A DNA stretch of 63,682 bases, filler included, from Octopus bimaculoides (lineage: Eukaryota): assembly GCF_001194135.2 (NCBI RefSeq). It is 6 parts of 6 records of this genome, joined end to end, with 100 filler letters (N's around TTAATTAATTAA, not from the genome) between each part and the next. Parts side by side here need not be neighbours in the genome. Positions count along the whole stretch, not along the records: positions 43,414 to 59,273 come from NC_068986.1; 5 more parts are not named here. One strand, 5' to 3'. Position numbers and translations under genes: made by a program. Each line of letters begins with the position of its first letter. The stretch's first letter is position 1. Shown here piece after piece: positions 43,314 to 58,479 of the stretch. The notes under the pieces were generated by a model. It worked only from the letters and a program-made list of their open reading frames with translations. It did not search any database and had not been told where the DNA came from.

Positions 43314-43634
43314 NNNNNNNNNNNNNNNNNNNNNNNNNNNNNNNNNNNNNNNNNNNNTTAATTAATTAANNNNNNNNNNNNNNNNNNNNNNNNNNNNNNN
43401 NNNNNNNNNNNNNCAAGAAGACTACAAGCCGATAACCAAAACAGTAACAATGAGGATAAATACATTCTCATATATACATATCCATATATACACCCTTATA
43501 CACATTATGTCCCCTCACATATACCCATACTTATTCATACATACACAACTGTGTGGCCAACTATCATTACATCCGTATGTACACAACTACATACCTACCT
43601 ACATACTCACCTATGCATATACACATACATAAAT

Positions 43635-43673
<39 letters not shown>

Positions 43674-43774
43674 CATACATATATACATATACATACAACC
43701 ATGTAGATATCCACACCCAGCCCCCAACCCCTAACTCTCTCACGTTATATATACATATATATTATAATAATTAT

Positions 43775-43824
<50 letters not shown>

Positions 43825-45159
43825 TATGTATATATAAAGGTTATGAAGGGTATTGGAGTCAACCAAACCCTAAAGATACAAGCAATACCGAGTAAGTGCT
43901 GTATACCGACTAGTTTTGCCCCTGTCTTTGTAGCAACATGAGTGGGGAATATAACTTAGGCCGTGTATTAGCGTGTGTATATATAAATAAAGAAAAAGAT
44001 AAAGAGACCAATGGCAAAGTTAGAATTATATTTATGTATAAAGTCTTACAGCTGTTTCAGGGAAAATCCAATGTATCCCTTCATCGGAGACGGTAATAGT
44101 AGAAGAATGGATTATTACATCTATAAGAGGAGATTTCTAGTAAGAAGTGAGAGCGATAATATATATATATATATATANNNNNNNNNNNNNNNNNNNNNNN
44201 NNNNNNNNNNNNNNNNNNNNNNNNNNNNNNNNNNNNNNNNNNNNNNNNNNNNNNNNNNNNNNNNNNNNNNNNNNNNNNNNNNNNNNNNNNNNNNNNNNNN
44301 NNNNNNNNNNNNNNNNNNNNNNNNNNNNNNNNNNNNNNNNNNNNNNNNNNNNNNNNNNNNNNNNNNNNNNNNNNNNNNNNNNNNNNNNNNNNNNNNNNNN
44401 NNNNNNNNNNNNNNNNNNNNNNNNNNNNNNNNNNNNNNNNNNNNNNNNNNNNNNNNNNNNNNNNNNNNNNNNNNNNNNNNNNNNNNNNNNNNNNNNNNNN
44501 NNNNNNNNNNNNNNNNNNNNNNNNNNNNNNNNNNNNNNNNNNNNNNNNNNNNNNNNNNNNNNNNNNNNNNNNNNNNNNNNNNNNNNNNNNNNNNNNNNNN
44601 NNNNNNNNNNNNNNNNNNNNNNNNNNNNNNNNNNNNNNNNNNNNNNNNNNNNNNNNNNNNNNNNNNNNNNNNNNNNNNNNNNNNNNNNNNNNNNNNNNNN
44701 NNNNNNNNNNNNNNNNNNNNNNNNNNNNNNNNNNNNNNNNNNNNNNNNNNNNNNNNNNNNNNNNNNNNNNNNNNNNNNNNNNNNNNNNNNNNNNNNNNNN
44801 NNNNNNNNNNNNNNNNNNNNNNNNNNNNNNNNNNNNNNNNNNNNNNNNNNNNNNNNNNNNNNNNNNNNNNNNNNNNNNNNNNNNNNNNNNNNNNNNNNNN
44901 NNNNNNNNNNNNNNNNNNNNNNNNNNNNNNNNNNNNNNNNNNNNNNNNNNNNNNNNNNNNNNNNNNNNNNNNNNNNNNNNNNNNNNNNNNNNNNNNNNNN
45001 NNNNNNNNNNNNNNNNNNNNNNNNNNNNNNNNNNNNNNNNNNNNNNNNNNNNNNNNNNNNNNNNNNNNNNNNNNNNNNNNNNNNNNNNNNNNNNNNNNNN
45101 NNNNNNNNNNNNNNNNNNNNNNNNNNNNNNNNNNNNNNNNNNNNNNNNNNNNNNNNNNN

Positions 45160-46133
45160 GAACCGCTCGTGATTAGTATGCCAAGTTCAAAAATGGAAAG
45201 TTTGAACTCAAAGACGCATCTTTTTTCTGAGTTCGATGAAGAGTGATTAAACCAACTTTTGCACGAAAATTCTTGTCAAACGACGAGTGAAGAAATGGCA
45301 GAGAAAATGGAATGCTCGCTCCCACATTGCTATAGAGAAGCATCTTCACTCGATGGGAAAGGTTCAAAAGTATGGAGCATGGGTTCCGCATGCTTTAAGT
45401 GACAACAACAAAAATCAACGGGCCACAATCTCCGCTGGTTTACTTGCTCGTCACCGCTCAACTCATGGACACAAGCAACGATTTCTTTACAGAATCATTA
45501 CTGGCAACGCAAAATAGTGCCTCTACATCAATATGAAGCAGCGTAAGTAATGGCTTAACCCCGGTAAACAAGCGACACCGCGGTGAAAGAAGATCTTCAT
45601 TCGTGTAAAACGATGTTGTGCGTATGGTAAGACTGGGAGGGGGATTATCCATACCGAATTACTTGAACAGAATCAAGCGGTCAACGCGGAACTCTATGTT
45701 CAACAGATGGAACAACTCAACATGGCTATTCAAGAGAAAAGACCTAATCGTCAGCATTGAGTTCTTCTGCTGCACGACAACGCCCGCCTTCATATCGCCA
45801 ATAGGAGCAAGGAAGCCATTCAAACGCATGGCTGGGAAGTGCTGCCACACCTGCCGTACTCTCCTGATTTGGCACCAATAGATTTCCACCTCTTTCGATC
45901 TCTTTCACATGCTATACGCGGAGTTTCGTTCAATACTGATGCAGAATTGAGAGCTTGGTTGGATCAATTTTTCGAGTCGAAATCGGGTGATTTCTACCAA
46001 CGAGGTGTTGATAATCTTGTTGAACTTCGGGAAGAAGTTGTAAACAACAACGGTGAATACATTATTGAATAATTAGTTATTATTTTTTACTAAACATTTT
46101 AAAAAGGCAGCGGGAACTTAGTTGCCAACCTAA
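45160..46133 (+). mobile_element. Decayed mariner (DD34D) transposon, left end lost in gap
   Basis: Translation gives WVPHAL, ITGNAK (from ITGDEK), HDNA and YSPDLAPID with 34 residues between the last two Asp, plus several stops and frameshifts. Right TIR ...AACTTAGTTGCCAACCTAA is followed by TA. Confidence 0.95.
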
Positions 46134-46156
46134 TATATATATATATATATATATAA

Positions 46157-46222
<66 letters not shown>

Positions 46223-46235
46223 GCATAATACATAC

Positions 46236-46267
<32 letters not shown>

Positions 46268-46405
46268 CTGACATGATATTTTGAATGACGTTTATAGAAT
46301 ACACATGCATATCATATAACGCACTGTTTAGACTTTTTTTTTTGTGGAGTTTTGTGGAGACGAAAGAAAGCATTTACAAGAAAATCTATGAATTGTAATA
46401 CTTAC

Positions 46406-46533
46406 TGACAACGTATTTAGATTTGACGTATCCACCATGTATCACAAATCTACTTACAGTTGTTGACTGTTCACCAAGAGACGCTTGGTTGTTGGAACCA
46501 ATATTTACTTGAATACGTTTGACTTTTCCCTCC
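46406..46533 (-). CDS. S1 serine peptidase exon 3: EGKVKRIQVNIGSNNQASLGEQSTTVSRFVIHGGYVKSKYVV
   Basis: Acceptor tatttcattttatttcag, donor GTCA|GTAAGT, phase 2 to 1, joining exon 2 in frame (CT|G = Leu). Matches the S1 segment V.LG...EQ...V..I.H..Y that precedes the DIA (Asp102) motif. Confidence 0.9.
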
Positions 46534-47102
46534 CTGAAATAAAATGAAATATACCAAATGTTTAATTTCATATCATTATGTACTTGAAATTCTTCTCTTA
46601 GACGGAAATTTTTGTCCCTCATTTGTGGTATTGTAACATGGGTTTCTTATCGGGCACGGTTACTGTTTTCTTTATATCCATTTAAATACTGCTTCTTGAA
46701 CAGTGAGTGTGTTATTAAAATATAACTCTATGGCAATTGTTTGTCAGAACGATATTAGATACACTATGTAAAATGCACACAATCCATAGACAAAACGTTT
46801 ATAGATTGAATCGATGTAATCATTTCACACACGATTTTTATAAGTTGAAAACTAATGTATTAATACTAAATAAATATCTCCAATTATTTTATGTGAAAGA
46901 CAATTTATACTATGTTTGCTAGAAACATAAATTCCGATGTGAATTTTAACCTGATATTGAAGCCAGTATATATGTTAGTATTTACACCAACCAATTCTTT
47001 TCACACTTTATATTATACAAGCATAGCACCAAACCTTCTTTCATAATCAAGTGATGTAATATGAGTTGAAGACGTCAATATATATTTTATAAATATACTT
47101 AC

Positions 47103-47262
47103 AGACAGTGAGCTGCTGTCAAAACATGTGTAGCATCAATCAAAGTACCTCCACATGCACCATAACTATATTGTGAAGGCTGGTTAAATACTTTGAGATG
47201 GACAATGGATGGAAATTGACAGTTACTTGCTCGAGATCCACCGACGATTCCTTTCTGAGTGC
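47103..47262 (-). CDS. S1 serine peptidase exon 2: (G)TQKGIVGGSRASNCQFPSIVHLKVFNQPSQYSYGACGGTLIDATHVLTAAHC(L)
   Basis: Acceptor ttttctgattttctttcag, donor CT|GTAAGT, 160 nt open, phase 1 to 2. Contains the S1A motifs IVGG, CGGTL and TAAHC (His57). Confidence 0.95.
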
Positions 47263-47546
47263 CTGAAAGAAAATCAGAAAAGCAAATTGATATATATATA
47301 TTCCTGGATGAATTATTCTTGAATGTCTATATCACTTGTATATCACTTGAATATATCACTTGTATTTTGAAGCATTAACTGTATTTAAAAACTTACTTCC
47401 AAACTCCTTTTTCAAATTAAATCTATGATTTAAAAATATATGCAGCATTTACTGACATCGGCATGAACAATGATATCAGCTGGTATCAATACCAATTTTG
47501 AAAAGCTCTGTAACAAAAAACCTTTCGACTGGAGGGCCTGACTTAC

Positions 47547-47583
47547 CATTAGCAGAAACAAGAAGGTAGCACAGAGGCAGCAT
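47547..47583 (-). CDS. S1 serine peptidase exon 1, putative short signal peptide MLPLCYLLVSAN(G)
   Basis: ACCATG start 44 nt below an Inr, ending at a consensus donor AATG|GTAAGT in phase 1. The phase matches exon 2. Confidence 0.7.
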
Positions 47584-47622
47584 GGTATCACTAGATGTTA
47601 AGTTACAAGCGTAGAAGAGCTG

Positions 47623-47659
47623 AACTGATGCTAGGATTACGGAGAGTACGGTATTTATA
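47623..47659 (-). promoter_or_regulatory. TATA box and initiator of the S1 peptidase gene
   Basis: Minus-strand TATAAATA at 47659-47652 and TCAGTT at 47628-47623, about 33 nt apart and directly upstream of the ATG at 47583. Confidence 0.7.
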
Positions 47660-48762
47660 GGTAAGTCTCATTAGGAAAACATCCTTTCGTGAAAGAACAG
47701 CTGTAAATATCCATCAATATTCTAACAATATCGCAAAGAACAACAGAGAATGTTTCAATGTTATCATACAAAATATCTAATTATTAAAATTTTGCATAAT
47801 ACTCACAAAAGCGATGTTCTAATTTCTATTAAAGGAATGTTGTCACGTTTTGAAAAGTAATATTTAAAATTCATGTATGACAATGAGCAAAGAATCTCAT
47901 AGCAGAATCGATGTAACAGATGCCGCAATTAATAAGGAGAGCAGAGGCAAAATTACAACTAGAGACGAATTACTGAATTATTCAATGAATAATGAGAAAG
48001 CACAATACAATAATCCTATTTCCAAAGACATATATGCAAATTTTGAATATAGGCGCAGGTGTGATTGGGTGGCAAAAATTTTGCTTCGAAACCACTTGGT
48101 TCTGGGTTCAGTTCTGCTGCGTGCTAACTTGGGTAATTTTCCTGTATTATAGCCTCGAACCAAGCAAGGCGTTGTGAGTGCATTTGGTAGACGGAGTCTG
48201 AAGGAATCCCGCCATGTGTGTGTGTGTGTAATGTTTAAACACGAATTGGACTGCAAAGCCAATGGCTTAGCTGGCTGAAACTTCGAAATCACTGTCAGTA
48301 ATAATCTTGTTAAAAAACTATAAAACTATAAAATGTTACGAAAGTTTAGTGCAACCCTTCATGTTAATGTAAAATTATTTTCATAATAAGTGATCATAAA
48401 CATATACATACATACAGAAGCACGCACGCACACACACACACACACACACAGAGGCACGCAAACACACATAGTTATAATAATATGGGTAGTAGGCCTAAAA
48501 ATAAGTACTGGCCTCGATTTGTTTAACTCCCAATATTGTGCCGCAGCTTGGCTGCAGTCTAGAAACTGAAGCAAGTACAAGAATAAAAGAATATATATGT
48601 ATGAGTATATGCATATATATGTACATGTATGTACATACCTTCATCCACATGTATATATAGATGCATATCTGGGTACATGACGTTGCAAAAAAAACATGGA
48701 CAAAATGTTAAACAAGATACAAAAAACTCACAGGCCACACACACACACACACACACATACAT

Positions 48763-48800
<38 letters not shown>

Positions 48801-49299
48801 TACACACACACAAACATACGNNNNNNNNNNNNNNNNNNNNNNNNNNNNNNNNNNNNNNNNNNNNNNNNNNNNNNNNNNNNNNNNNNNNNNNNNNNNNNNN
48901 NNNNNNNNNNNNNNNNNNNNNNNNNNNNNNNNNNNNNNNNNNNNNNNNNNNNNNNNNNNNNNNNNNNNNNNNNNNNNNNNNNNNNNNNNNNNNNNNNNNN
49001 NNNNNNNNNNNNNNNNNNNNNNNNNNNNNNNNNNNNNNNNNNNNNNNNNNNNNNNNNNNNNNNNNNNNNNNNNNNNNNNNNNNNNNNNNNNNNNNNNNNN
49101 NNNNNNNNNNNNNNNNNNNNNNNNNNNNNNNNNNNNNNNNNNNNNNNNNNNNNNNNNNNNNNNNNNNNNNNNNNNNNNNNNNNNNNNNNNNNNNNNNNNN
49201 NNNNNNNNNNNNNNNNNNNNNNNNNNNNNNNNNNNNNNNNNNNNNNNNNNNNNNNNNNNNNNNNNNNNNNNNNNNNNNNNNNNNNNNNNNNNNNNNNNN

Positions 49300-49357
<58 letters not shown>

Positions 49358-50104
49358 CACACATAATATAAGGAAAATGCGGAGCTTGAACAAAGTAAAA
49401 ATCAATGTATTTGTCTGATAGTCACTTCCATATCGCCTATTTACGTTTCCATTTCTTACCATCATTCAGATTTGGTAATTAAGATTGCATTATGCATTTG
49501 AAAGGCAAAAATCTCTCCAGAGCAAAATTTAAGAATTATTTGTTCGCATCCTAATGAACGGAAAGTTACTTACAAACTGAGATAGCAGAATGCTTTTGTG
49601 TGTTTTTGTTTGTCAGTATGTGTGTCTTTTGTATTCCTTTCTTAAAATAGCTTGAGGTTAAACTACGACCACAGTGAGTAATGGCTAGTTGTAGTTCAGA
49701 GCAGCTAGGCAATACTATCATTCTCCTTTGATCGGTTTTATAAAAGCTGGCTACTACCCCTTTCTCTACTCACTTGTGGAGAGAATAAAAAGTAATATAT
49801 ATATATCTTAGCAAGAATCCAAATGAATACATGTATTCAACTTTTACTTATTTGGTTGTGAGAATTTCAATTTTTATTAGAATTTAAAAAATTTCTATTG
49901 ATGTATTAGTCTTATTTGATGATAGTTTAGGTTAAACATATTTTTAGTTTTTATAATTAATGGAGGTATGATTCACTATGTATCATATGTATGTAGTTAG
50001 ACTATTTTCAAATGGTGAAGGTACATTTCATTTTGAGGTTACTTCCTATTTTTATTTTAATTCTTCATCATTCATGTTGTGTTTATTTAAATGTAATTTA
50101 TTGA

Positions 50105-50148
<44 letters not shown>

Positions 50149-50781
50149 NNNNNNNNNNNNNNNNNNNNNNNNNNNNNNNNNNNNNNNNNNNNNNNNNNNN
50201 NNNNNNNNNNNNNNNNNNNNNNNNNNNNNNNNNNNNNNNNNNNNNNNNNNNNNNNNNNNNNNNNNNNNNNNNNNNNNNGATAATGGGAAAATACTATGAA
50301 TTAAGTTTTCCCTGAAATGTGAATACAAACGAAATGAAACAAGTTGCGCGTAAATCGTACCAGTGGTTATTGAGATATTGGGGGTCTAGGCGATATAAGT
50401 ATCCCAAACGGTGCATAATGGGAAAATACTTCGAAAATAAGTTAACTCGGAATGGGAAGAAACTCTAACATTTCGGTTAGACACATTAGGGGCTTTAACT
50501 TGCCAACGCAAAAATACGAGTTATTTTTACAGTAAATGTTTCTATTTTCGCTTTTCTTAAACACAATATTTCAATCATTTAGAAATATTTTTAAGTGAAT
50601 GGGATTTCAAAAATGTAAGTTGTTTGTAAAATAAGTTTTATATGTTAGCTTTCTTTAAACGCACAATATATTAATCTTTTTAAAAATTAGTTTCAAGTGA
50701 ATACAATTACAAAACTTTTGGCCTATTTTTAAAATATTTTAAAGTGAAAATGACTTTAAAAAATATGGTAAATATATCGTA

Positions 50782-51232
50782 AAAGATCCGTTCATAACCT
50801 CGGTGTGAAATGATTTCTTTGCATAGGTTTATTTCGAGTGCATTCAACGTATCTCACCGTCAAAGATTCGGATGCTATTTCTAGCACTCCCTGGCAGCAC
50901 GTAACAGCTATTTGCGATAACTGACCCGAAGTAGCTATTACGTGGTAACAAGGCGTGTAAGAAATAGCAAGCAAATCTGACCTTTTCCGGGAAGAGGAGC
51001 CGTTTTCACGTGATTTCGATGTCATGCGTTGAAAGCATGCGAAATAACCCGGAAAAGAAAAAATACTCCACGAAACAAAATTCCATTGGTGGGTAACTTA
51101 GAGTTTCCCGGAAAACTCCGAGGTCTCCACAACCCTCCTCCCCTTTCTTTTCTGGAAGAAAGTGACTTCCGGTGTGTTTGGGTAAGATACGTTGAATGCA
51201 CTCGAAAAATAACTGTACGAACGGATCCTTTA
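50782..51232. repeat. Degenerate inverted-repeat element within a composite repeat (50280-51670)
   Basis: TTTCGAGTGCATTCAACGTATCT pairs with AGATACGTTGAATGCACTCGAAA, and GATCCGTTC pairs with GAACGGATC. Surrounding direct repeats ..TAAATCGGACCACGGGTT.. at ~50350, 51455 and 51605. Confidence 0.7.
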
Positions 51233-52199
51233 TGAAATACATACCCAAAATCGGTACAGGCATGCTAATAGAAGGACGGATGAGACTCATAAAGCATGGC
51301 TGAGCATCTGGCGGAACAGAGAGGAAGAGACTGAAGCAGGAGAGATCAGGAATCGGACACTCGGTGAGCTGAATGTTTGGCGAAACAGAGGGAAAGAGAC
51401 AAAAGCAGGAGACGTCATGAATCGAATGCTCATGTGAATACAAATGGAATAAAACAAGTTTTGCATAAATCGGACCACGGGTTACCAAGATACATGGTTT
51501 TTTCGGGTACCTTTATAAATAAAACCGGCGTATAACGGGGAAAATGCTTTGAAAGTACGGTACCCTTTAAATGTGAACATACACATAATAACAGAAGTTT
51601 CGTGTAAATCGGACCACGGGTTCCCGATATACACGGTGTTTTCGGCTACCTTGAACTATTGGTGACCCATNNNNNNNNNNNNNNNNNNNNNNNNNNNNNN
51701 NNNNNNNNNNNNNNNNNNNNNNNNNNNNNNNNNNNNNNNNNNNNNNNNNNNNNNNNNNNNNNNNNNNNNNNNNNNNNNNNNNNNNNNNNNNNNNNNNNNN
51801 NNNNNNNNNNNNNNNNNNNNNNNNNNNNNNNNNNNNNNNNNNNNNNNNNNNNNNNNNNNNNNNNNNNNNNNNNNNNNNNNNNNNNNNNNNNNNNNNNNNN
51901 NNNNNNNNNNNNNNNNNNNNNNNNNNNNNNNNNNNNNNNNNNNNNNNNNNNNNNNNNNNNNNNNNNNNNNNNNNNNNNNNNNNNNNNNNACACATATATA
52001 TATATATTTGTTTTCCTTTATGAATATAACAAGTTCATTATCCATCATTTAATACAATTGTTAAATTATCTATTTTAATACATCAGCTGATAGTAAGGGT
52101 TTCAATGTGTATTCCCTTATTTGATTAATATAAAATTATTAGTTCTTGATATTTATTTATTCACATAATGCCTGTTTAATTATATTTATTTGGAGTTAC

Positions 52200-52910
52200 T
52201 CGACGTATATTCATTGCTATAATGTCTATTTAATTTTGTTTATTTGAATTTATTAAACATATATCTAATTCTATGTGAGTAATAAAAATCTATTTTTCTT
52301 TTATTGTTGATTAATTTGTACTTGGATGTAATGATCTGGAAAATTTCCGCAATGCATTAGTCATACTTTTTGCTTCCAGCACTGTAAGATTTTGCCCTGC
52401 TAATTAATTCCCACTTCAGTGTATATTCCTTATGTTTGTCCTTAATTTCCGAAATCAATCTACTTAAACTAGTGCTAGCTTCTTTCCTCTTATCTCTAAA
52501 AATGCTTTCATGGTTGGCTATCCCGCTTTTCATATAATTTTCCGTAGAGCCTATATAGTAGTAATCTTGTTCTCTGACGTTACTTTACACCTATGTATCA
52601 TACTTTTTTCTCTACAAAACTTTGTTAATGGATATCTATTTTTATTTTTATTGGCACAATCACAGGTTTCATTTTCGGGACCTTTCGCTGTTTCCTTATT
52701 ACTAATGCTGTACCTATTTCCCCCGTTTTCAGGGTTGTTTTCTTTATATTTATTTCTTATGTTATGAGTTTTAACTAATAACTTATCTTTTTTCCTCTTC
52801 ATATCCATCTTAATATTTATATTGTAAATTATTTTATGTTCGTGGTTGCTACTATTTGTATCAGCATATATATCTAAATTATTTGCATTAGTGTATTTAT
52901 TATCGTTGTT
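52200..52910 (-). mobile_element. Penelope-like element GIY-YIG endonuclease region
   Basis: NETCDC..YPL..FCREKSMIHRCKVTSENK, then frameshifted YIGSTEN..ANH..EYTLKWELISRAKSYSAGSKK. Explains ORF 52551..53165. Confidence 0.8.
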
Positions 52911-52911
52911 T

Positions 52912-52973
<62 letters not shown>

Positions 52974-52987
52974 ATCATCATCATCAA

Positions 52988-53051
<64 letters not shown>

Positions 53052-53076
53052 TTTATTATTATTATCATCATCATCG

Positions 53077-53141
<65 letters not shown>

Positions 53142-53204
53142 TAATCTCCTTTTTGTAGGCTGCAAGCTTACATTTTTTGATCTGCGTGTGGCGATATTAA
53201 TGGT

Positions 53205-53515
53205 TACGTTTTGGATTGATCCAAATTGATCAGTGCCCTACCCATGCCAGATTCCTTAACTGCCCAACTGCCCTGTCTACGATGTAGCGCACGAGGTGGA
53301 GGTTGCCATGGATGCTCTAGCTCGGCACGGCGCATGTTTGTGCCTTGTCGACCAGTTTCTCGATGACAAGCGCCAACCTCTTGGCTAGCACCTTAGCCAA
53401 AATTTTCTAATCTTTATTGAGCGGAGTGATGGGTCTCAAGTTATCTATTACGTCCTCCTTGTTTGGATCTTTTTTTTAGCAGTGGTACGGATCCTCGGCT
53501 CACAAAACTGAGGAT
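53205..53515 (-). mobile_element. L1/Tx1-like reverse transcriptase fragment
   Basis: KKDPNK.DVIDNLRPIT.LN.D.KILAKVLAKRLALV..AQTCAVP.RSIHGNLHLVRYI..ALINLDQSK. Confidence 0.8.
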
Positions 53516-53684
53516 NNNNNNNNNNNNNNNNNNNNNNNNNNNNNNNNNNNNNNNNNNNNNNNNNNNNNNNNNNNNNNNNNNNNNNNNNNNNNNNNNNNNN
53601 NNNNNNNNNNNNNNNAATTAAATGGAGTTGCTTGAAACGATCGTAGTGCATTACCTCTGGATATCTTTGTTGCTTATTTTAATT

Positions 53685-53740
<56 letters not shown>

Positions 53741-55060
53741 TAGGGGATGATGATATGTGTGTGTGTGTGTTGTTAAGTCAGTGTTTGTCAGCCACTATCA
53801 CATGAGAATGGTTGTGTTTTTACGTCTCCAAAACGTAGCGGTTTCGCAAACGGGTCGATAAAATAAGTACCAGTCTTTAAAAAAAAAAATAGGCAGTAGT
53901 GTCAATTCGTTCGAGTAAAAATTCTTCAATGTGGTGCCCCAACATGACCACAGTCTAATGTCTGAAACAAGTAAAACAAAAAACATCTGGCCTTTATTTT
54001 TCACCAGACGTTATTTATAGAGGTTACCGTATCATACACCTGTGCTATGCCTTTGGAAGCCTCCTATTGTCGACCGCCGTTTAATTTTAGTCTCCTCGAA
54101 TCCCAAACGAAAGTTCCTCGTATATTTCAGTTTGCAAAAGCCACGAGCAATAATTTTATCATTGATTGCTATCATTTACTTTATGGAGAAGGCAAAGCGT
54201 GAAGAAATTCACTGTCCCACATTGTTTCATAGTTTGTTTTAAATTGCCCTCTGTGTCATTGGCCGTTGTGGGCCAATAAAAGAGATAATAATAATAATTA
54301 GTATTACAATTATCATTGTTATTATCTAAGGCGGTGCGCTGGCAGAATCGTTAGTGCTATTGACGAAATGCTTAGCGGTATTTCTGAGTTCAAATTCCGC
54401 CGAGGTCGATTTTACCATTCATTCCTAAAGGGTCGATAAAATAGGGACTAGTTGAACACTTCGGTCGATGTAATCGACTTATCCCCTCCCACAAAATTGC
54501 TGACCTTGTGGCAAAATTTGAAATCTTTATTTTGACCTAGTAATAGCGGTTAAATAATTTTTAACCGCTTGAATTTAATAATTAATAGGGCTTTATTTAA
54601 TAAAAAGGTCTGTTATCTAGAAAAAAAAGCTGTTTATAAATACAATTTGCAGTTAAATAAATGCTGTCTACTTACTCAATTCAAACGACACTAATTAGAA
54701 ATATTACAAAAAAACTTATCGAAAGTAATTCATTCAATTCACTTGTTCGTTGTTAACACTCCACACATTATTCTTTCCTAGCAAACAATTAAGTGCTTTT
54801 TGTTTTGTTTTTCCTTTCTTGTTATTTCCATTAAACCCAATATAAGAAATTTTTTAATTTCTCGATCGATTTTAGTATTTAGGAAAAGTTAACTGATTTT
54901 TGTAGCTCTCATCAGTTCTTTACTTACTTACGAAAGCTAACTATTGCCTTAACTCTTTGATCATCTTTGCTTTAATTTTAAACAGAATGAAACATCCAGA
55001 CCAACATAAATACATCATTATTACATGTAAAAGAGATTATAAGATATACTATTAACTTAC

Positions 55061-55104
55061 CAGCTCTGGGTTGTTGTTCTCTTTACAAACCTGACGAATC
55101 AATT
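55061..55104 (-). CDS. Candidate 44-nt orphan exon LIRQVCKENNNPEL
   Basis: Acceptor tatttcacttcag, donor CTG|GTAAGT, single open frame, phase 1 to 0. Confidence 0.4.
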
Positions 55105-55715
55105 CTGAAGTGAAATAATTGTTAAAAAAAAAAAAACCTGAAATGTAAACAACGAAATACGCTGCTACAAGAACTACTTAAAATTTTGTTTTAGTCACCA
55201 TCTGTAGTAGAAAACAAATGAAAAAAACCCCTCAAAAAAACACAAAGCTATTCTATATGTGACCATATAGTCAATATATATCGTTTTGTATATATGTGAT
55301 ATATATTGTTTAATATAATGTAAAAGACGTTTAATAATATTTTCACTTCTTGCATTTAATAAAAATGCATTTTATATATCCATGAAGATATTTAGTACGT
55401 ACATCCAGTACAGATGAAAAGATTATTTAAGTATTAAATTTAGTATGGTGACATTTTTTTTTTCTGTAGCAATTTTGCTTTCGTTTCAATTAGCCATATT
55501 TTTACAGGAAACATTTGTAGCGGAAGCATGGCTGCTCTTATCCTTTAGCTGCCCACATTGTGCCGTTTTACTTTAACTCTGTATTTTGGTTCACCGCGTG
55601 ATGGTTAGGTCTCTTTAACTTTATTTGGATCGCCCAACCCTTAGCATGATGAACTAACATAGCGTGACATTATTATATAAACTATACGGGAATTCTGATA
55701 GAAGCACACCATATT

Positions 55716-55924
55716 TATTTCTTTATTGCCCACAGGGCAACGACAGACAAAGGAATTAAGTGGATTACATCGACCTCAATGCGTAACTGGTACTTATTTA
55801 ATCGATCTCGAGGGATGAAAGGTTAAGTCGACATCGGCGGAATTTGAACTCAGAACGTAACGGCACACGAAATATCGCTATGCATTTCGTCCTGTGTGCT
55901 AACAATTTTGCCAGCTCGCTGCCC
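55716..55924 (-). mobile_element. SINE family B with a 17-bp target-site duplication
   Basis: TAGAAGCACACCATATT at 55699-55715 and 55925-55941. Head GGCAGCGAGCTGGC..TTAGC, B box GAGTTCAAATTCC, body CTTTCATCC..GATCGATTAAATAAGTACCAG. Other copies at 14275-14692(-, two), 38205-38613(-, two) and 54327-54520(+). Confidence 0.88.
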
Positions 55925-56178
55925 TAGAAGCACACCATATTATCAACAGTAATTTTATTTTCGTAACGACATGAGCGTGTCCCTCCTCGACTTTGTTTCC
56001 TCATAACTTTCTGGAAAAATAGTTGTTTTTAATGAAATTTCCTACAAATATAATTTCAGATGGTATAGATTATTGTTATCGGAATTTAATGAGTGAGAGA
56101 AAAAAATTGGGGGCAGATATTTTACACATTTTAACTTTGCTTCCTCATATGTTTTGATGATATAAATTACAATTACAT

Positions 56179-56533
56179 GGTACTACTAAAGCAGCATGGT
56201 CCCGAACTCGCAGTCGCGCAGTTGCGCGTCCGCGCTAGCTAGTCGTGAGTGGTCGATCCTACAAAAAGTGCGCGTGTGTGCNNNNNNNNNNGCGCTAGCT
56301 AGTCGTGAGTGGTCGATCCTACAAAAAGTGCGCGTGTGTGCAAATGAATACGTGTTTAGGGTTAGGGTTAGGATCTACCACTCACGACTAGCTAGTAGTA
56401 CCCCCTAACCCTAAACACGTATTCATTTGCACACACGCGCGCACGCTTTGTAGGATCGACCACTCACGACTAGCTAGCGCGGACGCGCAACTGCGCGACT
56501 GCGAGTTCGGGACCATGCTGCTTTAGTAGTACC
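56179..56533. mobile_element. Non-autonomous foldback/MITE with ~130-bp near-perfect TIRs, 9-bp TSD and internal TTAGGG repeats (Mutator-like)
   Basis: TIRs start GGTACTACTAAAGCAGCATGG. CAATTACAT is duplicated at 56170-56178 and 56534-56542. (TTAGGG)2-3 lies at the inner end of each arm. Confidence 0.85.
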
Positions 56534-57429
56534 CAATTACATTGAAAAAATATTATGGGGATTGTTCCACCCTTTATCCTCTGAAATTTGTTAAGTAAAC
56601 ATATTTTTGATAAAATGAAAGCTATTAAATTTTTTCACAAAATATCCTTGTAAAATAGGGGCACGTCTTACACGCAAGCAAATACGATAAGTATCAGTGT
56701 ATTGACAGAAGTCCAGTAAATTTCGCTGTTTCCCTTTCGGTTTTACATTTTACCTCTGAAAATAGAGAGAAACTTAACATACACACACACACCTTCTCTC
56801 TCTTTCTCTCCTCAGCACTGAACACGGTAAAAATTCCAGATCAACACTCATATACTACTCAAACTATATGTTCTGGAGGTGTCAGACAAATATAAAAACC
56901 ACTATCTACAACTGCGTGTTGTGTGACACACGTGCGTAATTAAACAAATAAGAACCGAGAGTGGCCTCCCTTTAGGATTAGACGTTTATACTGTTAAAGA
57001 CTTATCTTTGCTAGATACAGCAGTAATTTCTTTCTGCGACCAACTTCCAACTCTATTTATTTGAAAGCAGCACATGACTTATGAGATAGAGATCACGACA
57101 GGTTGAGCTGAACTAGGTTTTCTGTTTCCAGCTTCAGTAGACAGTTGATACAGAAAGTAATGAGAAAACGAGCTGAGATCCATCAACCTGGACAAACAGG
57201 TTTCGTGACAAGCAGGGGGCTGTATATAGCGGTAACTGCCATCTAAATAGGTGCAATACAGCAGTAATTTCAATAGTATCAAATTCCAAATAGAAATAAT
57301 CATTTCACATTCATGTTTACACACACCATTCAGTGTATACTTCAATCGGTACTGCTGATTCAATTCTAATCTTTGTAAACGACCGTATAAATAAACATAT
57401 TGATATATAAGTCCCTCGTTACTCACATT

Positions 57430-57815
57430 TGTTGTTGCTGTTGGCACTCCGTCGCTTACGACGTCGAGGGTTCCAGTTGATCCGATCAACGGAACAGCCT
57501 GCTCGTGAAATTAACGTGCAAGTGGCTGAGCACTCCACAGACAAGTGTACCCTTAACGTAGTTCTCGGGGACATTCAGCGTGACACAGTGTGACAAGGCT
57601 GACCCTTTGAATTACAGGCACAACAGAAACAGGAAGTAAGAGTGAGAGAAAGTTGTGGTGGAAGAGTACAGCAGGGTTCGCCACCATCCCCTGCCGGAGC
57701 CTCGTGGAGCTTTAGGTGTTTTCGCTCAATAAACACTCACAACGCCCGGTCTGGGAATCGAAACTGCGATCCTATGACCGCGAGTCCGCTGCCCTAACCA
57801 CTGGGTCATTGCGCC
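57430..57815 (-). mobile_element. Full-length SINE family C (tRNA-like head, (CAA)n tail)
   Basis: GGCGCAATGACCCAGTGGTTAGGGCAGCGGACTCGCGG..GTTTCGATTCCC. The 3' half is shared with copies at 40272-40503(+), 36785-37095(+) and 11230-11405(+). Confidence 0.85.
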
Positions 57816-58479
57816 TCCTCATTCAGATACCATAGATACTCTAATTGCATTTCGTTCACATACACACACGACTGGCTTCCGTATAGTTCCTGACTCATAA
57901 ATTTACTCAAAAGGCATTAGTTAAACCGACAAGACGCATACCAAAAGGTACCTCACAGAAAAATGGGACCTCCTAACCAAACAGCCACATCTGCAAGACT
58001 ACTGCTTACTTATAAAGTTAGCATTAAAAAGTTAACATTAATGCGCTATAGATTAAATTTGCCTTACCTGTATTATTCCACTAAGCTCCGAGCAGAAACC
58101 TATGTCGGATCGAATTTGTCTTATATACAAAAATAAAGTCTGGGTTGTAATGAGGGCAAGCATGATTGTACGGTTCAAAAGTTCGCTTTCCAGCCACATG
58201 GGTTTAATAATCATAACTACAACACAACATTCTCGGTAAATGTTTGCTACCATAGCCTAAGTTTGACTAATACAAATCAACTTCAACCGAGACGGGGAAA
58301 ACTACTTCATCTCAAGATTCAATTGATATTTCACAGAACTGGATTTTTAAGTTAGAGGGACGATCCAACTGATTGGCTTTAAGTATAAATATATTAATAG
58401 ATCCGATTTATACAAAATAAAATCGACAGAGAAAATTAAAGGGGAGGAAGAAAGGTGTTATAAGTCCACCTTTGAACTT

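What the first reader, a model, noticed from the sequence alone, without database searches (positions are those of the whole stretch)
46406..47659. Spliced S1 serine peptidase gene not resolved by the ORF track
The sequence shows three minus-strand exons with consensus splice sites and matching phases (1, 2, 1), spelling signal-IVGG-CGGTL-TAAHC-VIHGGY behind a TATA box and Inr. S1 peptidases are known major digestive and posterior-salivary-gland (venom) proteins in cephalopods. The sharp TATA/Inr promoter suggests tissue-specific high expression (inference).
Basis: partly seen in the sequence, partly recalled or inferred. Interest (0 to 1): 0.72.

Follow-up and report, generated by a model that had tools for sequence, protein, structure and literature searches.

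The report
First half of an annotated octopus protease gene

Summary
Minus-strand exons 47583-47547, 47262-47103 and 46533-46406 have GTAAGT donors, polypyrimidine-CAG acceptors and phases 1, 2, 1. They splice to a 108-aa peptide that hits Pfam Trypsin (E = 3.6e-14).

That peptide is 100% identical to residues 1-108 of XP_014776393.1, 'chymotrypsin-1 [Octopus bimaculoides]', 251 aa. The piece is 100% identical to the O. bimaculoides chromosome record CM046606.1.

The finding covers only the 5' 43% of the coding sequence, including the catalytic His64. Exons 4-6 carry Asp111 and Ser205. They lie beyond the left edge of the piece, behind an assembly gap. Adding them reproduces the RefSeq protein exactly.

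The O. sinensis orthologue has the same six exons and an identical TATA box and initiator. No indel occurs in 719 nt of exons 2-6, where about 10 are expected, so the gene is intact and under constraint. Amino-acid change is nevertheless fast (omega 0.72 overall, 1.3 in exons 2-3).

A tree places the gene in the cephalopod-specific S1 clade, next to cDNAs whose SP1 names and clade I take to be posterior-salivary-gland derived. Expression in that gland was not tested here.

Verdict: correct call, already known, low interest.

The parts
47654..47659 (-). TATA box (TATAAA; TATAAATA in full), at -33 from the inferred start site
   Evidence: Read directly. It is the only TATAAA-N22-30-TCAGTT pair in the window, with 0.09 expected. 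It is identical in O. sinensis and in both O. vulgaris copies. Function as a promoter is inferred.
47623..47628 (-). Initiator-like TCAGTT (fits YYANWYY with the next C); inferred +1 at A 47626, giving a 43-nt 5' UTR
   Evidence: Invariant in the three octopus species. The transcription start itself was not tested.
47547..47583 (-). Exon 1 coding part: ATG plus 12 codons plus 1 nt (MLPLCYLLVSAN-G), the signal peptide. It is 21 nt shorter, in frame, than in O. sinensis and O. vulgaris.
   Evidence: Identical to residues 1-13 of XP_014776393.1.
47263..47546 (-). Intron 1 (284 nt, GT..AG, phase 1)
   Evidence: 92.5% identical to the O. sinensis intron.
47103..47262 (-). Exon 2 (160 nt): short propeptide TQKG, mature N-terminus IVGG, Cys27, Cys49 and Cys65, catalytic His64 in TAAHC
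   Evidence: Same length and boundaries in O. sinensis.
46534..47102 (-). Intron 2 (569 nt, GT..AG, phase 2)
   Evidence: 92.1% identical to the O. sinensis intron, with 14 indels.
46406..46533 (-). Exon 3 (128 nt): EGKVKRIQVNIGSNN...VIHGGYVKSKYVV, ending in phase 1
   Evidence: Same length and boundaries in O. sinensis.
43414..46405 (-). 5' part of intron 3, cut by the edge of the piece. It holds microsatellites, a mariner fossil and the 982-N gap 44178-45159. Exon 4 lies about 1.7 kb beyond 43414.
   Evidence: No S1 motif or tblastn hit here. In the chromosome record the piece ends at a 1192-N gap, and exons 4-6 follow at L004 15904-16038, 16134-16279 and 17445-17594.
45160..46072 (+). Degraded Mos1-type mariner transposase remnant inside intron 3. 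It is a passenger, not part of the protease.
   Evidence: ORF 45839-46072 matches the Mos1 transposase C-terminus, E = 7.5e-18. Frame breaks upstream are seen. It is present at the same place in O. sinensis and O. vulgaris at about 85% identity.

Best explanation
The finding is the promoter and first three exons of a six-exon Octopus bimaculoides gene that RefSeq annotates as chymotrypsin-1 (XP_014776393.1, 251 aa).

The product is a secreted pre-pro-enzyme of the chymotrypsin fold (family S1).
- It has a very short signal peptide (MLPLCYLLVSA/NG) and a four- to six-residue propeptide.
- The mature N-terminus is Ile18 (IVGG). In this fold that N-terminus inserts to form the active site.
- The catalytic triad is His64, Asp111 and Ser205.
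- Ten cysteines in the mature chain allow five disulfides.
- Ser199 aligns with the position-189 Asp of kallikrein. This argues for chymotrypsin- or elastase-like cleavage rather than trypsin-like cleavage.

Only His64 and the N-terminal beta-barrel half are encoded in the piece.

What is shown: exon structure, identity to the RefSeq protein, family, intact triad, orthology, constraint on the reading frame, and clade.

What is inferred: signal-peptide cleavage, activation after Gly17, substrate preference, use of the TATA/initiator promoter, and expression in the posterior salivary (venom) gland or digestive tract.
For: Exons and phases were read directly.

Pfam Trypsin scores 53.5 bits for the 108-aa part. 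For the full protein it scores 166.4 bits over profile positions 1-220 of 220.

The 108 aa equal residues 1-108 of P0367 = XP_014776393.1. The piece is 100% identical to GCA_001194135.2 CM046606.1.

The O. sinensis orthologue XP_036359552.1 has six exons. Exons 2-6 have identical lengths of 160, 128, 135, 146 and 150 nt. The region is collinear with it across promoter, introns and the mariner fossil.

There are no indels in 719 nt of exons 2-6, where about 10 are expected from the non-coding rate (P about 5e-5). All 38 columns invariant across the 12 aligned sequences (window included) hold the family residue in the window peptide.

In the alignment to plasma kallikrein, Ser stands at the position of Asp189.

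In a neighbour-joining tree all but one of the 39 cephalopod sequences form a clade with 100% support. The gene sits in an 11-member subclade (86%) with SP1-Par-1, SP1-Abd-7, SP1-Oct-1 and SP1-Abd-10.

Published work reports that posterior-salivary-gland serine proteases all belong to a cephalopod-specific clade and dominate gland-specific expression in O. bimaculoides (PMC7656900).
Against: No expression data could be consulted, so neither the tissue nor transcription itself was shown here. RefSeq models are predictions.

The signal peptide lacks 7 codons present in the orthologue, and the other clade members also have longer leaders. Its hydrophobic core is only about 8 residues, so secretion efficiency is uncertain.

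The residue before Ile18 is Gly, not Arg or Lys, so the activating cleavage is unusual and its protease is unknown.

Exons 2-3 are no better conserved than the introns (88.5% against about 92% identity) and have omega 1.3. Taken alone, this would also fit relaxed constraint.

Intron 3 contains two unsequenced gaps.
Confidence: 0.92

Rival explanations
1. A decaying or recently inactivated gene copy (pseudogene) that still looks intact. On this view the fast amino-acid change and the truncated signal peptide reflect lost function.
For: Exons 2-3 have dN 0.132, dS 0.101 and omega 1.31, and they are slightly more diverged than the introns. Exon 1 has a 21-nt deletion in the signal peptide relative to O. 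sinensis and O. vulgaris. The 2015 annotation gave only fragments of 66 and 102 aa.
Against: The full 251-codon frame is open, with consensus splice sites. There are no indels in 719 nt of exons 2-6 against about 10 expected. The exon 1 deletion is in frame. All family-invariant residues and the triad are kept. Omega is 0.47 in exons 4-6 and 0.72 overall. Many replacements are conservative, such as K/R, I/V and S/T. The excess of exon over intron divergence is not significant (P = 0.13). The fragmentary 2015 models are explained by read-through into the GTAAGT donor and by assembly gaps.
Confidence: 0.05
2. A functional S1 protease that is not a salivary-gland (venom) component but acts elsewhere, for example in the digestive gland, haemocytes or development.
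For: Tissue was not tested. The gene lies on a different chromosome-scale record (117 Mb in O. bimaculoides, 120 Mb in O. sinensis) from the main paralogue group (35.5 Mb and 28.9 Mb records). In Hapalochlaena, published work reports that clade members are expressed non-specifically in several tissues.
Against: Its nearest relatives in the tree, apart from genome models, are the SP1 cDNAs. That these came from posterior-salivary-gland libraries rests on my recollection of their origin. The literature places all posterior-salivary-gland serine proteases in this cephalopod-specific clade. This rival concerns where the enzyme acts, not what it is, and it is compatible with the main explanation.
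Confidence: 0.35

Closest known systems
XP_014776393.1, chymotrypsin-1 [Octopus bimaculoides] (RefSeq; also UniRef fragments A0A0L8H0U4, 66 aa, and A0A0L8H147, 102 aa)
   Same: It is the same gene. Residues 1-108 are identical to the spliced peptide, and the same junctions are used. The piece is 100% identical to the genome record that carries it.
   Different: Nothing differs in sequence. The finding covers only exons 1-3. The 66-aa UniRef entry is exons 1-2 read through into the TAA of the exon 2 donor. The 102-aa entry is exons 5-6.
XP_036359552.1, chymotrypsin-1-like [Octopus sinensis] (orthologue), and the O. vulgaris head-to-head pair
   Same: Six exons with identical lengths for exons 2-6, a collinear locus including the mariner fossil in intron 3, and identical TATA box and initiator. 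Both share the motifs KGIVGGSRA and CQFP.
   Different: Amino-acid identity is 85% over exons 2-6 and 81% over exons 2-3. The signal peptide is 7 residues longer. O. vulgaris carries two inverted copies.
Cephalopod SP1 / 'S1 type peptidase' cDNAs (SP1-Abd-10, SP1-Oct-1, SP1-Par-1, Octopus kaurna and Sepia latimanus entries)
   Same: Same cephalopod-specific clade. Similar size of about 255 aa, an extra conserved Cys27...Cys126 pair, and a short pro-region without Arg or Lys before the I-V-x-G N-terminus.
   Different: Only 52-63% identical over the first 108 residues. Those proteins read TQ|IVGGSPA.NCEFP where this gene reads KG|IVGGSRASNCQFP. Gland expression is documented for them, not for this gene.
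Vertebrate chymotrypsin and elastase, and the plasma kallikrein catalytic domain (solved structures)
   Same: Same fold and catalytic machinery. The best matches to solved structures are elastase 1 for the fragment (E = 1.6e-07) and plasma kallikrein for the full protein (E = 1.1e-30). Ser stands at position 189, as in chymotrypsin.
   Different: Sequence identity is low (not tabulated here). Kallikrein has Asp189, giving trypsin-like specificity, and is activated after Arg. The octopus protein has Gly before Ile16 (chymotrypsin numbering) and a clade-specific extra cysteine pair.

Membership tests
Peptidase family S1 (chymotrypsin fold, Pfam PF00089) | Significant match to the Trypsin domain model | tested here: met
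   The fragment scores 53.5 bits against a cut-off of 20.6, over profile 1-84/220. The full protein scores 166.4 bits over profile 1-220/220.
Peptidase family S1 (chymotrypsin fold, Pfam PF00089) | Catalytic His57 in the TAAHC motif, with the flanking Cys42-Cys58 pair | tested here: met
   His64 in LTAAHC, with Cys49 and Cys65, is encoded in exon 2 at 47103-47262.
Peptidase family S1 (chymotrypsin fold, Pfam PF00089) | Catalytic Asp102 (DIAL-type motif) | tested here: met
   It is not in the piece. It is present as Asp111 in KNDIAIL, in exon 4 of the same gene, at L004 15904-16038.
Peptidase family S1 (chymotrypsin fold, Pfam PF00089) | Catalytic Ser195 in GDSGGP, with Asp194 | tested here: met
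   It is not in the piece. It is present as Ser205 in CQGDSGGPL, in exon 6, at L004 17445-17594.
Peptidase family S1 (chymotrypsin fold, Pfam PF00089) | Zymogen with a new N-terminus Ile16-Val-Gly-Gly after activation | tested here: inconclusive
   IVGG is present at residues 18-21. The preceding residue is Gly. The cleavage event and its protease cannot be tested with sequence tools.
Peptidase family S1 (chymotrypsin fold, Pfam PF00089) | Peptidase activity | not testable with these tools
   This needs recombinant or native protein.
Cephalopod-specific SP1 clade (posterior-salivary-gland serine proteases) | Groups with cephalopod SP1 sequences to the exclusion of other animal S1 peptidases | tested here: met
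   In a neighbour-joining tree of 47 sequences with 100 bootstraps, a cephalopod clade has 100% support. An 11-member subclade that includes four SP1 cDNAs has 86%.
Cephalopod-specific SP1 clade (posterior-salivary-gland serine proteases) | Shared gene structure (six exons, same phases) | tested here: met
   The paralogue in O. sinensis L001 also has six exons. It is split at the same points after TAAHCL and after ...YV[IV], and exon 1 ends in phase 1. The orthologue's structure is identical.
Cephalopod-specific SP1 clade (posterior-salivary-gland serine proteases) | Expression in the posterior salivary gland, or presence in saliva | not testable with these tools
   No transcriptome or proteome could be queried. 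No paper in the library cites the accession.

The most novel reading that the evidence does not exclude
The N-terminal half of this protease (exons 2-3, omega about 1.3, more diverged than its own introns) is under diversifying selection, while the C-terminal half is conserved (omega 0.47). Together with a lineage-specific 7-residue shortening of the signal peptide, this would mark a venom or digestive protease being retuned in O. bimaculoides.
Probability: 0.12. Interest if true: 0.3.

Novelty: already known. Interest (0 to 1): 0.1.

Why it matters
It matters little beyond quality control. It shows that the sequence-only reader can recover exact splice junctions, reading phases and a promoter of a real animal gene. 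It also shows that an ORF track misses such genes.

For cephalopod biology the gene is one more annotated member of the expanded, cephalopod-specific S1 family that dominates posterior-salivary-gland expression in octopods.

Four small points are useful to annotators.
- The 2015 protein set splits this gene into 66-aa and 102-aa fragments.
- Intron 3 still has two assembly gaps.
- The O. vulgaris models of the orthologue are mis-spliced.
- The pair O. bimaculoides / O. sinensis shows a high, unevenly distributed omega for this gene.

Tried and rejected
- **Exons 4-6 inside the piece.** I searched by motif scan in six frames and by permissive tblastn with six family members and the orthologue. 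Nothing was found. They lie beyond 43414.
- **First protein search.** The single-sequence word-index search returned only a 71-aa paralogue fragment and missed the identical RefSeq protein. The gene was found only through profile searches and a cluster listing.
- **Exact look-ups.** Look-ups of P0001 and P0292 were not on record.
- **Mariner ORFs in Pfam.** Pfam gave no hit on them. The search against solved structures identified Mos1.
- **Exons evolving faster than introns.** The trend is 11.5% against 8.7% mismatches, but it is not significant (Fisher P = 0.13). I do not claim positive selection.
- **Promoter conservation as proof of function.** Background identity is about 92%, so an invariant 8-mer between these species proves little. 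The chance test within the window and the TATA box of a distant paralogue carry more weight.
- **Other searches.** No tRNA or Rfam family was found in the piece. No paper mentions the accession.

Full report
**1. Observation**

On the minus strand the sequence shows three exons.
- Exon 1: an ATG at 47583, followed by 37 coding bases up to a G|GTAAGT donor.
- Exon 2: 160 nt, 47262-47103, behind a polypyrimidine-CAG acceptor, ending CT|GTAAGT.
- Exon 3: 128 nt, 46533-46406, behind ttttatttcag, ending A|GTAAGT.

The phases are 1, 2, 1. The spliced product has 108 residues plus one base.

It matches Pfam Trypsin (PF00089) at 53.5 bits, E = 3.6e-14, over model positions 1-84 of 220. Its best matches among solved structures are elastase 1 and other S1 enzymes.

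Upstream lie TATAAA (47659-47654) and TCAGTT (47628-47623), with the TATA box at -33 from the initiator A. This is the only such pair on either strand of the 59-kb window, where 0.09 are expected from shuffles.

**2. What is missing from the stated range**

Neither a DIAL-type Asp motif nor GDSGGP occurs anywhere in the piece in six frames. Permissive tblastn with family members finds only exons 1-3.

Downstream of exon 3 the piece holds several unrelated features.
- Microsatellites.
- A degraded Mos1-type mariner on the plus strand, 45160-46072. Its C-terminal ORF matches Mos1 transposase at E = 7.5e-18.
- A 982-N gap, 44178-45159.
- A further 764 bases up to the edge of the piece.

**3. Identification**

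The exhaustive representative search gave a 257-aa O. sinensis protein at 59% identity as the best single-domain hit. A profile search then gave XP_036359552.1 of O. sinensis at 74% identity over the full 108 residues.

A second profile search surfaced a 102-aa O. bimaculoides fragment, P0292. Its 90% cluster also holds P0367 and P0368.
- P0367 is XP_014776393.1, 'chymotrypsin-1 [Octopus bimaculoides]', 251 aa.
- P0368 is UniRef A0A0L8H0U4, 66 aa.

The first 108 residues of P0367 are identical to the spliced peptide. P0368 is exons 1-2 read through into the TAA of the exon 2 donor.

The genomic locus of P0367 is L004 (GCA_001194135.2, CM046606.1). It is 100% identical to the piece from 43414 to 57583. 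The piece's left edge abuts a further 1192-N gap.

All junctions have AG/GT boundaries. The result translates exactly to the 251-aa RefSeq protein.

So the window is O. bimaculoides. The gene is already annotated, and the finding is its first three exons of six. The full protein matches Pfam Trypsin end to end at 166.4 bits.

**4. Comparative anatomy**

The O. sinensis locus L002 is collinear with window 45161-48668. The collinear stretch covers promoter, introns and the mariner fossil, so that insertion predates the species split. The O. sinensis gene has six exons, and exons 2-6 have the same lengths of 160, 128, 135, 146 and 150 nt.

A more distant paralogue in O. sinensis (L001) is also split after TAAHCL and after ...YVI. 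Its exon 1 ends in phase 1, and it carries a TATATAAA 43 nt upstream of its ATG.

The TATA box and initiator of the window are invariant in O. sinensis and in both O. vulgaris copies. With about 92% background identity this alone is weak evidence.

Exon 1 of O. bimaculoides lacks 21 nt, in frame, relative to the other two species. The signal peptide is therefore only about 11-13 residues, with a hydrophobic core of 8.

In O. vulgaris (L003) the gene is present as a head-to-head inverted pair, each copy with all six exons. The deposited protein models retain intron 1 sequence or skip exon 2.

**5. Is it a live gene?**

Non-coding sequence between O. bimaculoides and O. sinensis shows 8.7% mismatches and one indel per 72 nt.

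Exons 2-6 show no indel in 719 nt, where about 10 are expected (P about 5e-5). The single exon 1 indel is in frame. All 38 columns invariant across the 12 aligned sequences (window included) hold the family residue in the window peptide.

The full protein has His64, Asp111 and Ser205, and ten cysteines in the mature chain.

Amino-acid change is nevertheless fast.
- Exons 2-6: omega 0.72.
- Exons 2-3: omega 1.31, with these exons slightly more diverged than the introns.
- Exons 4-6: omega 0.47.

The excess of exon over non-coding divergence is not significant (P = 0.13). I therefore read this as a rapidly evolving but constrained secreted enzyme. It is not a pseudogene, and positive selection is not demonstrated.

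**6. Mechanism**

By homology this is a secreted chymotrypsin-fold zymogen. Steps inferred from established knowledge of family S1:
- The signal peptide is removed.
- A short propeptide (NGTQKG or TQKG) is removed to expose Ile18.
- Ile18 pairs with Asp204, the residue before the catalytic Ser, to form the oxyanion hole.

The residue before Ile18 is Gly. Clade relatives have Gln there, so activation is not tryptic.

In the alignment to plasma kallikrein, Ser199 occupies the position of Asp189. This predicts chymotrypsin- or elastase-like specificity rather than trypsin-like specificity.

**7. Family placement**

I built a neighbour-joining tree of 47 sequences with 100 bootstraps. All but one of the 39 cephalopod sequences form a clade with 100% support, and all 39 group apart from the non-cephalopod outgroups.

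The gene pairs with its O. sinensis orthologue at 100%. It sits in an 86% subclade with SP1-Par-1, SP1-Abd-7, SP1-Oct-1 and SP1-Abd-10.

A published genome paper reports two relevant points (PMC7656900). Posterior-salivary-gland serine proteases of eleven cephalopods all belong to a cephalopod-specific clade. Such proteases account for 17-20% of gland-specific expression in O. bimaculoides.

Whether this particular paralogue is expressed there could not be tested. It lies on a different chromosome-scale record from the main paralogue group.

**8. Verdict**

The feature is a known, annotated gene of an ordinary kind. Interest is low.

Noticed in passing
window 45160-46072 (+): Degraded Mos1-type mariner transposase remnant inside intron 3 of the protease gene. 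The last 77 codons are open (E = 7.5e-18 to Mos1), and upstream parts are broken by stops and frame changes. The same insertion sits at the same place in O. sinensis and O. vulgaris at about 85% identity, so it predates their split.
   Followed up: partly
window 43414 (piece edge) and 44178-45159; L004 12425-13406 and 14171-15362: Intron 3 of the gene still holds two unsequenced gaps (982 N and 1192 N) in the chromosome-level O. bimaculoides assembly. The edge of the piece coincides with the second gap. Exon 4 starts about 1.7 kb beyond it.
   Followed up: yes
window 47547-47583 (-): Exon 1 is 21 nt (7 codons) shorter, in frame, than in O. sinensis and O. vulgaris. This leaves an unusually short signal peptide (MLPLCYLLVSA...). 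Whether secretion is affected is unknown.
   Followed up: partly
window 46406-47262 (-) against L002; exons 4-6 in L004: The substitution pattern along the gene is uneven between O. bimaculoides and O. sinensis: omega 1.31 in exons 2-3 against 0.47 in exons 4-6. Exons 2-3 are slightly more diverged than the flanking introns, though not significantly (P = 0.13).
   Followed up: partly
L003 104-6534 (-) and 10001-16147 (+) (O. vulgaris OX597819.1): The orthologue is present as a head-to-head inverted pair in the O. vulgaris assembly, but as a single copy in O. sinensis and O. bimaculoides. The deposited O. vulgaris proteins (CAI9724875, CAI9724876, CAI9724877) retain intron 1 sequence, skip exon 2 or fuse neighbouring genes.
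   Followed up: partly
UniRef A0A0L8H0U4 (66 aa) and A0A0L8H147 (102 aa): The 2015 O. bimaculoides protein set splits this gene into two fragments. One is exons 1-2 read through into the TAA of the GTAAGT donor. The other is exons 5-6, starting at an ATG inside intron 4.
   Followed up: yes
window 56179-56533: A 102-nt inverted repeat (56179-56280 / 56432-56533, 97% complementary). In addition, an exact 50-nt direct duplicate sits on either side of the 10-N gap (56232-56281 = 56292-56341). The duplicate looks like an assembly join artefact within a foldback element.
   Followed up: no
window 57444-57818; 54382-54487; 55738-55874: Interspersed repeats are shared with an unrelated O. sinensis locus (L001). 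Window 57444-57818 is mostly 92-94% identical to five copies there. The other two segments match a roughly 183-bp tandem array in introns of the paralogue.
   Followed up: no
window 52551-53165: A trinucleotide microsatellite (AAT/ATC-type) creates spurious long ORFs on both strands: poly-Asn/Asp, 204 aa, and poly-Leu/Ser, 127 aa.
   Followed up: no
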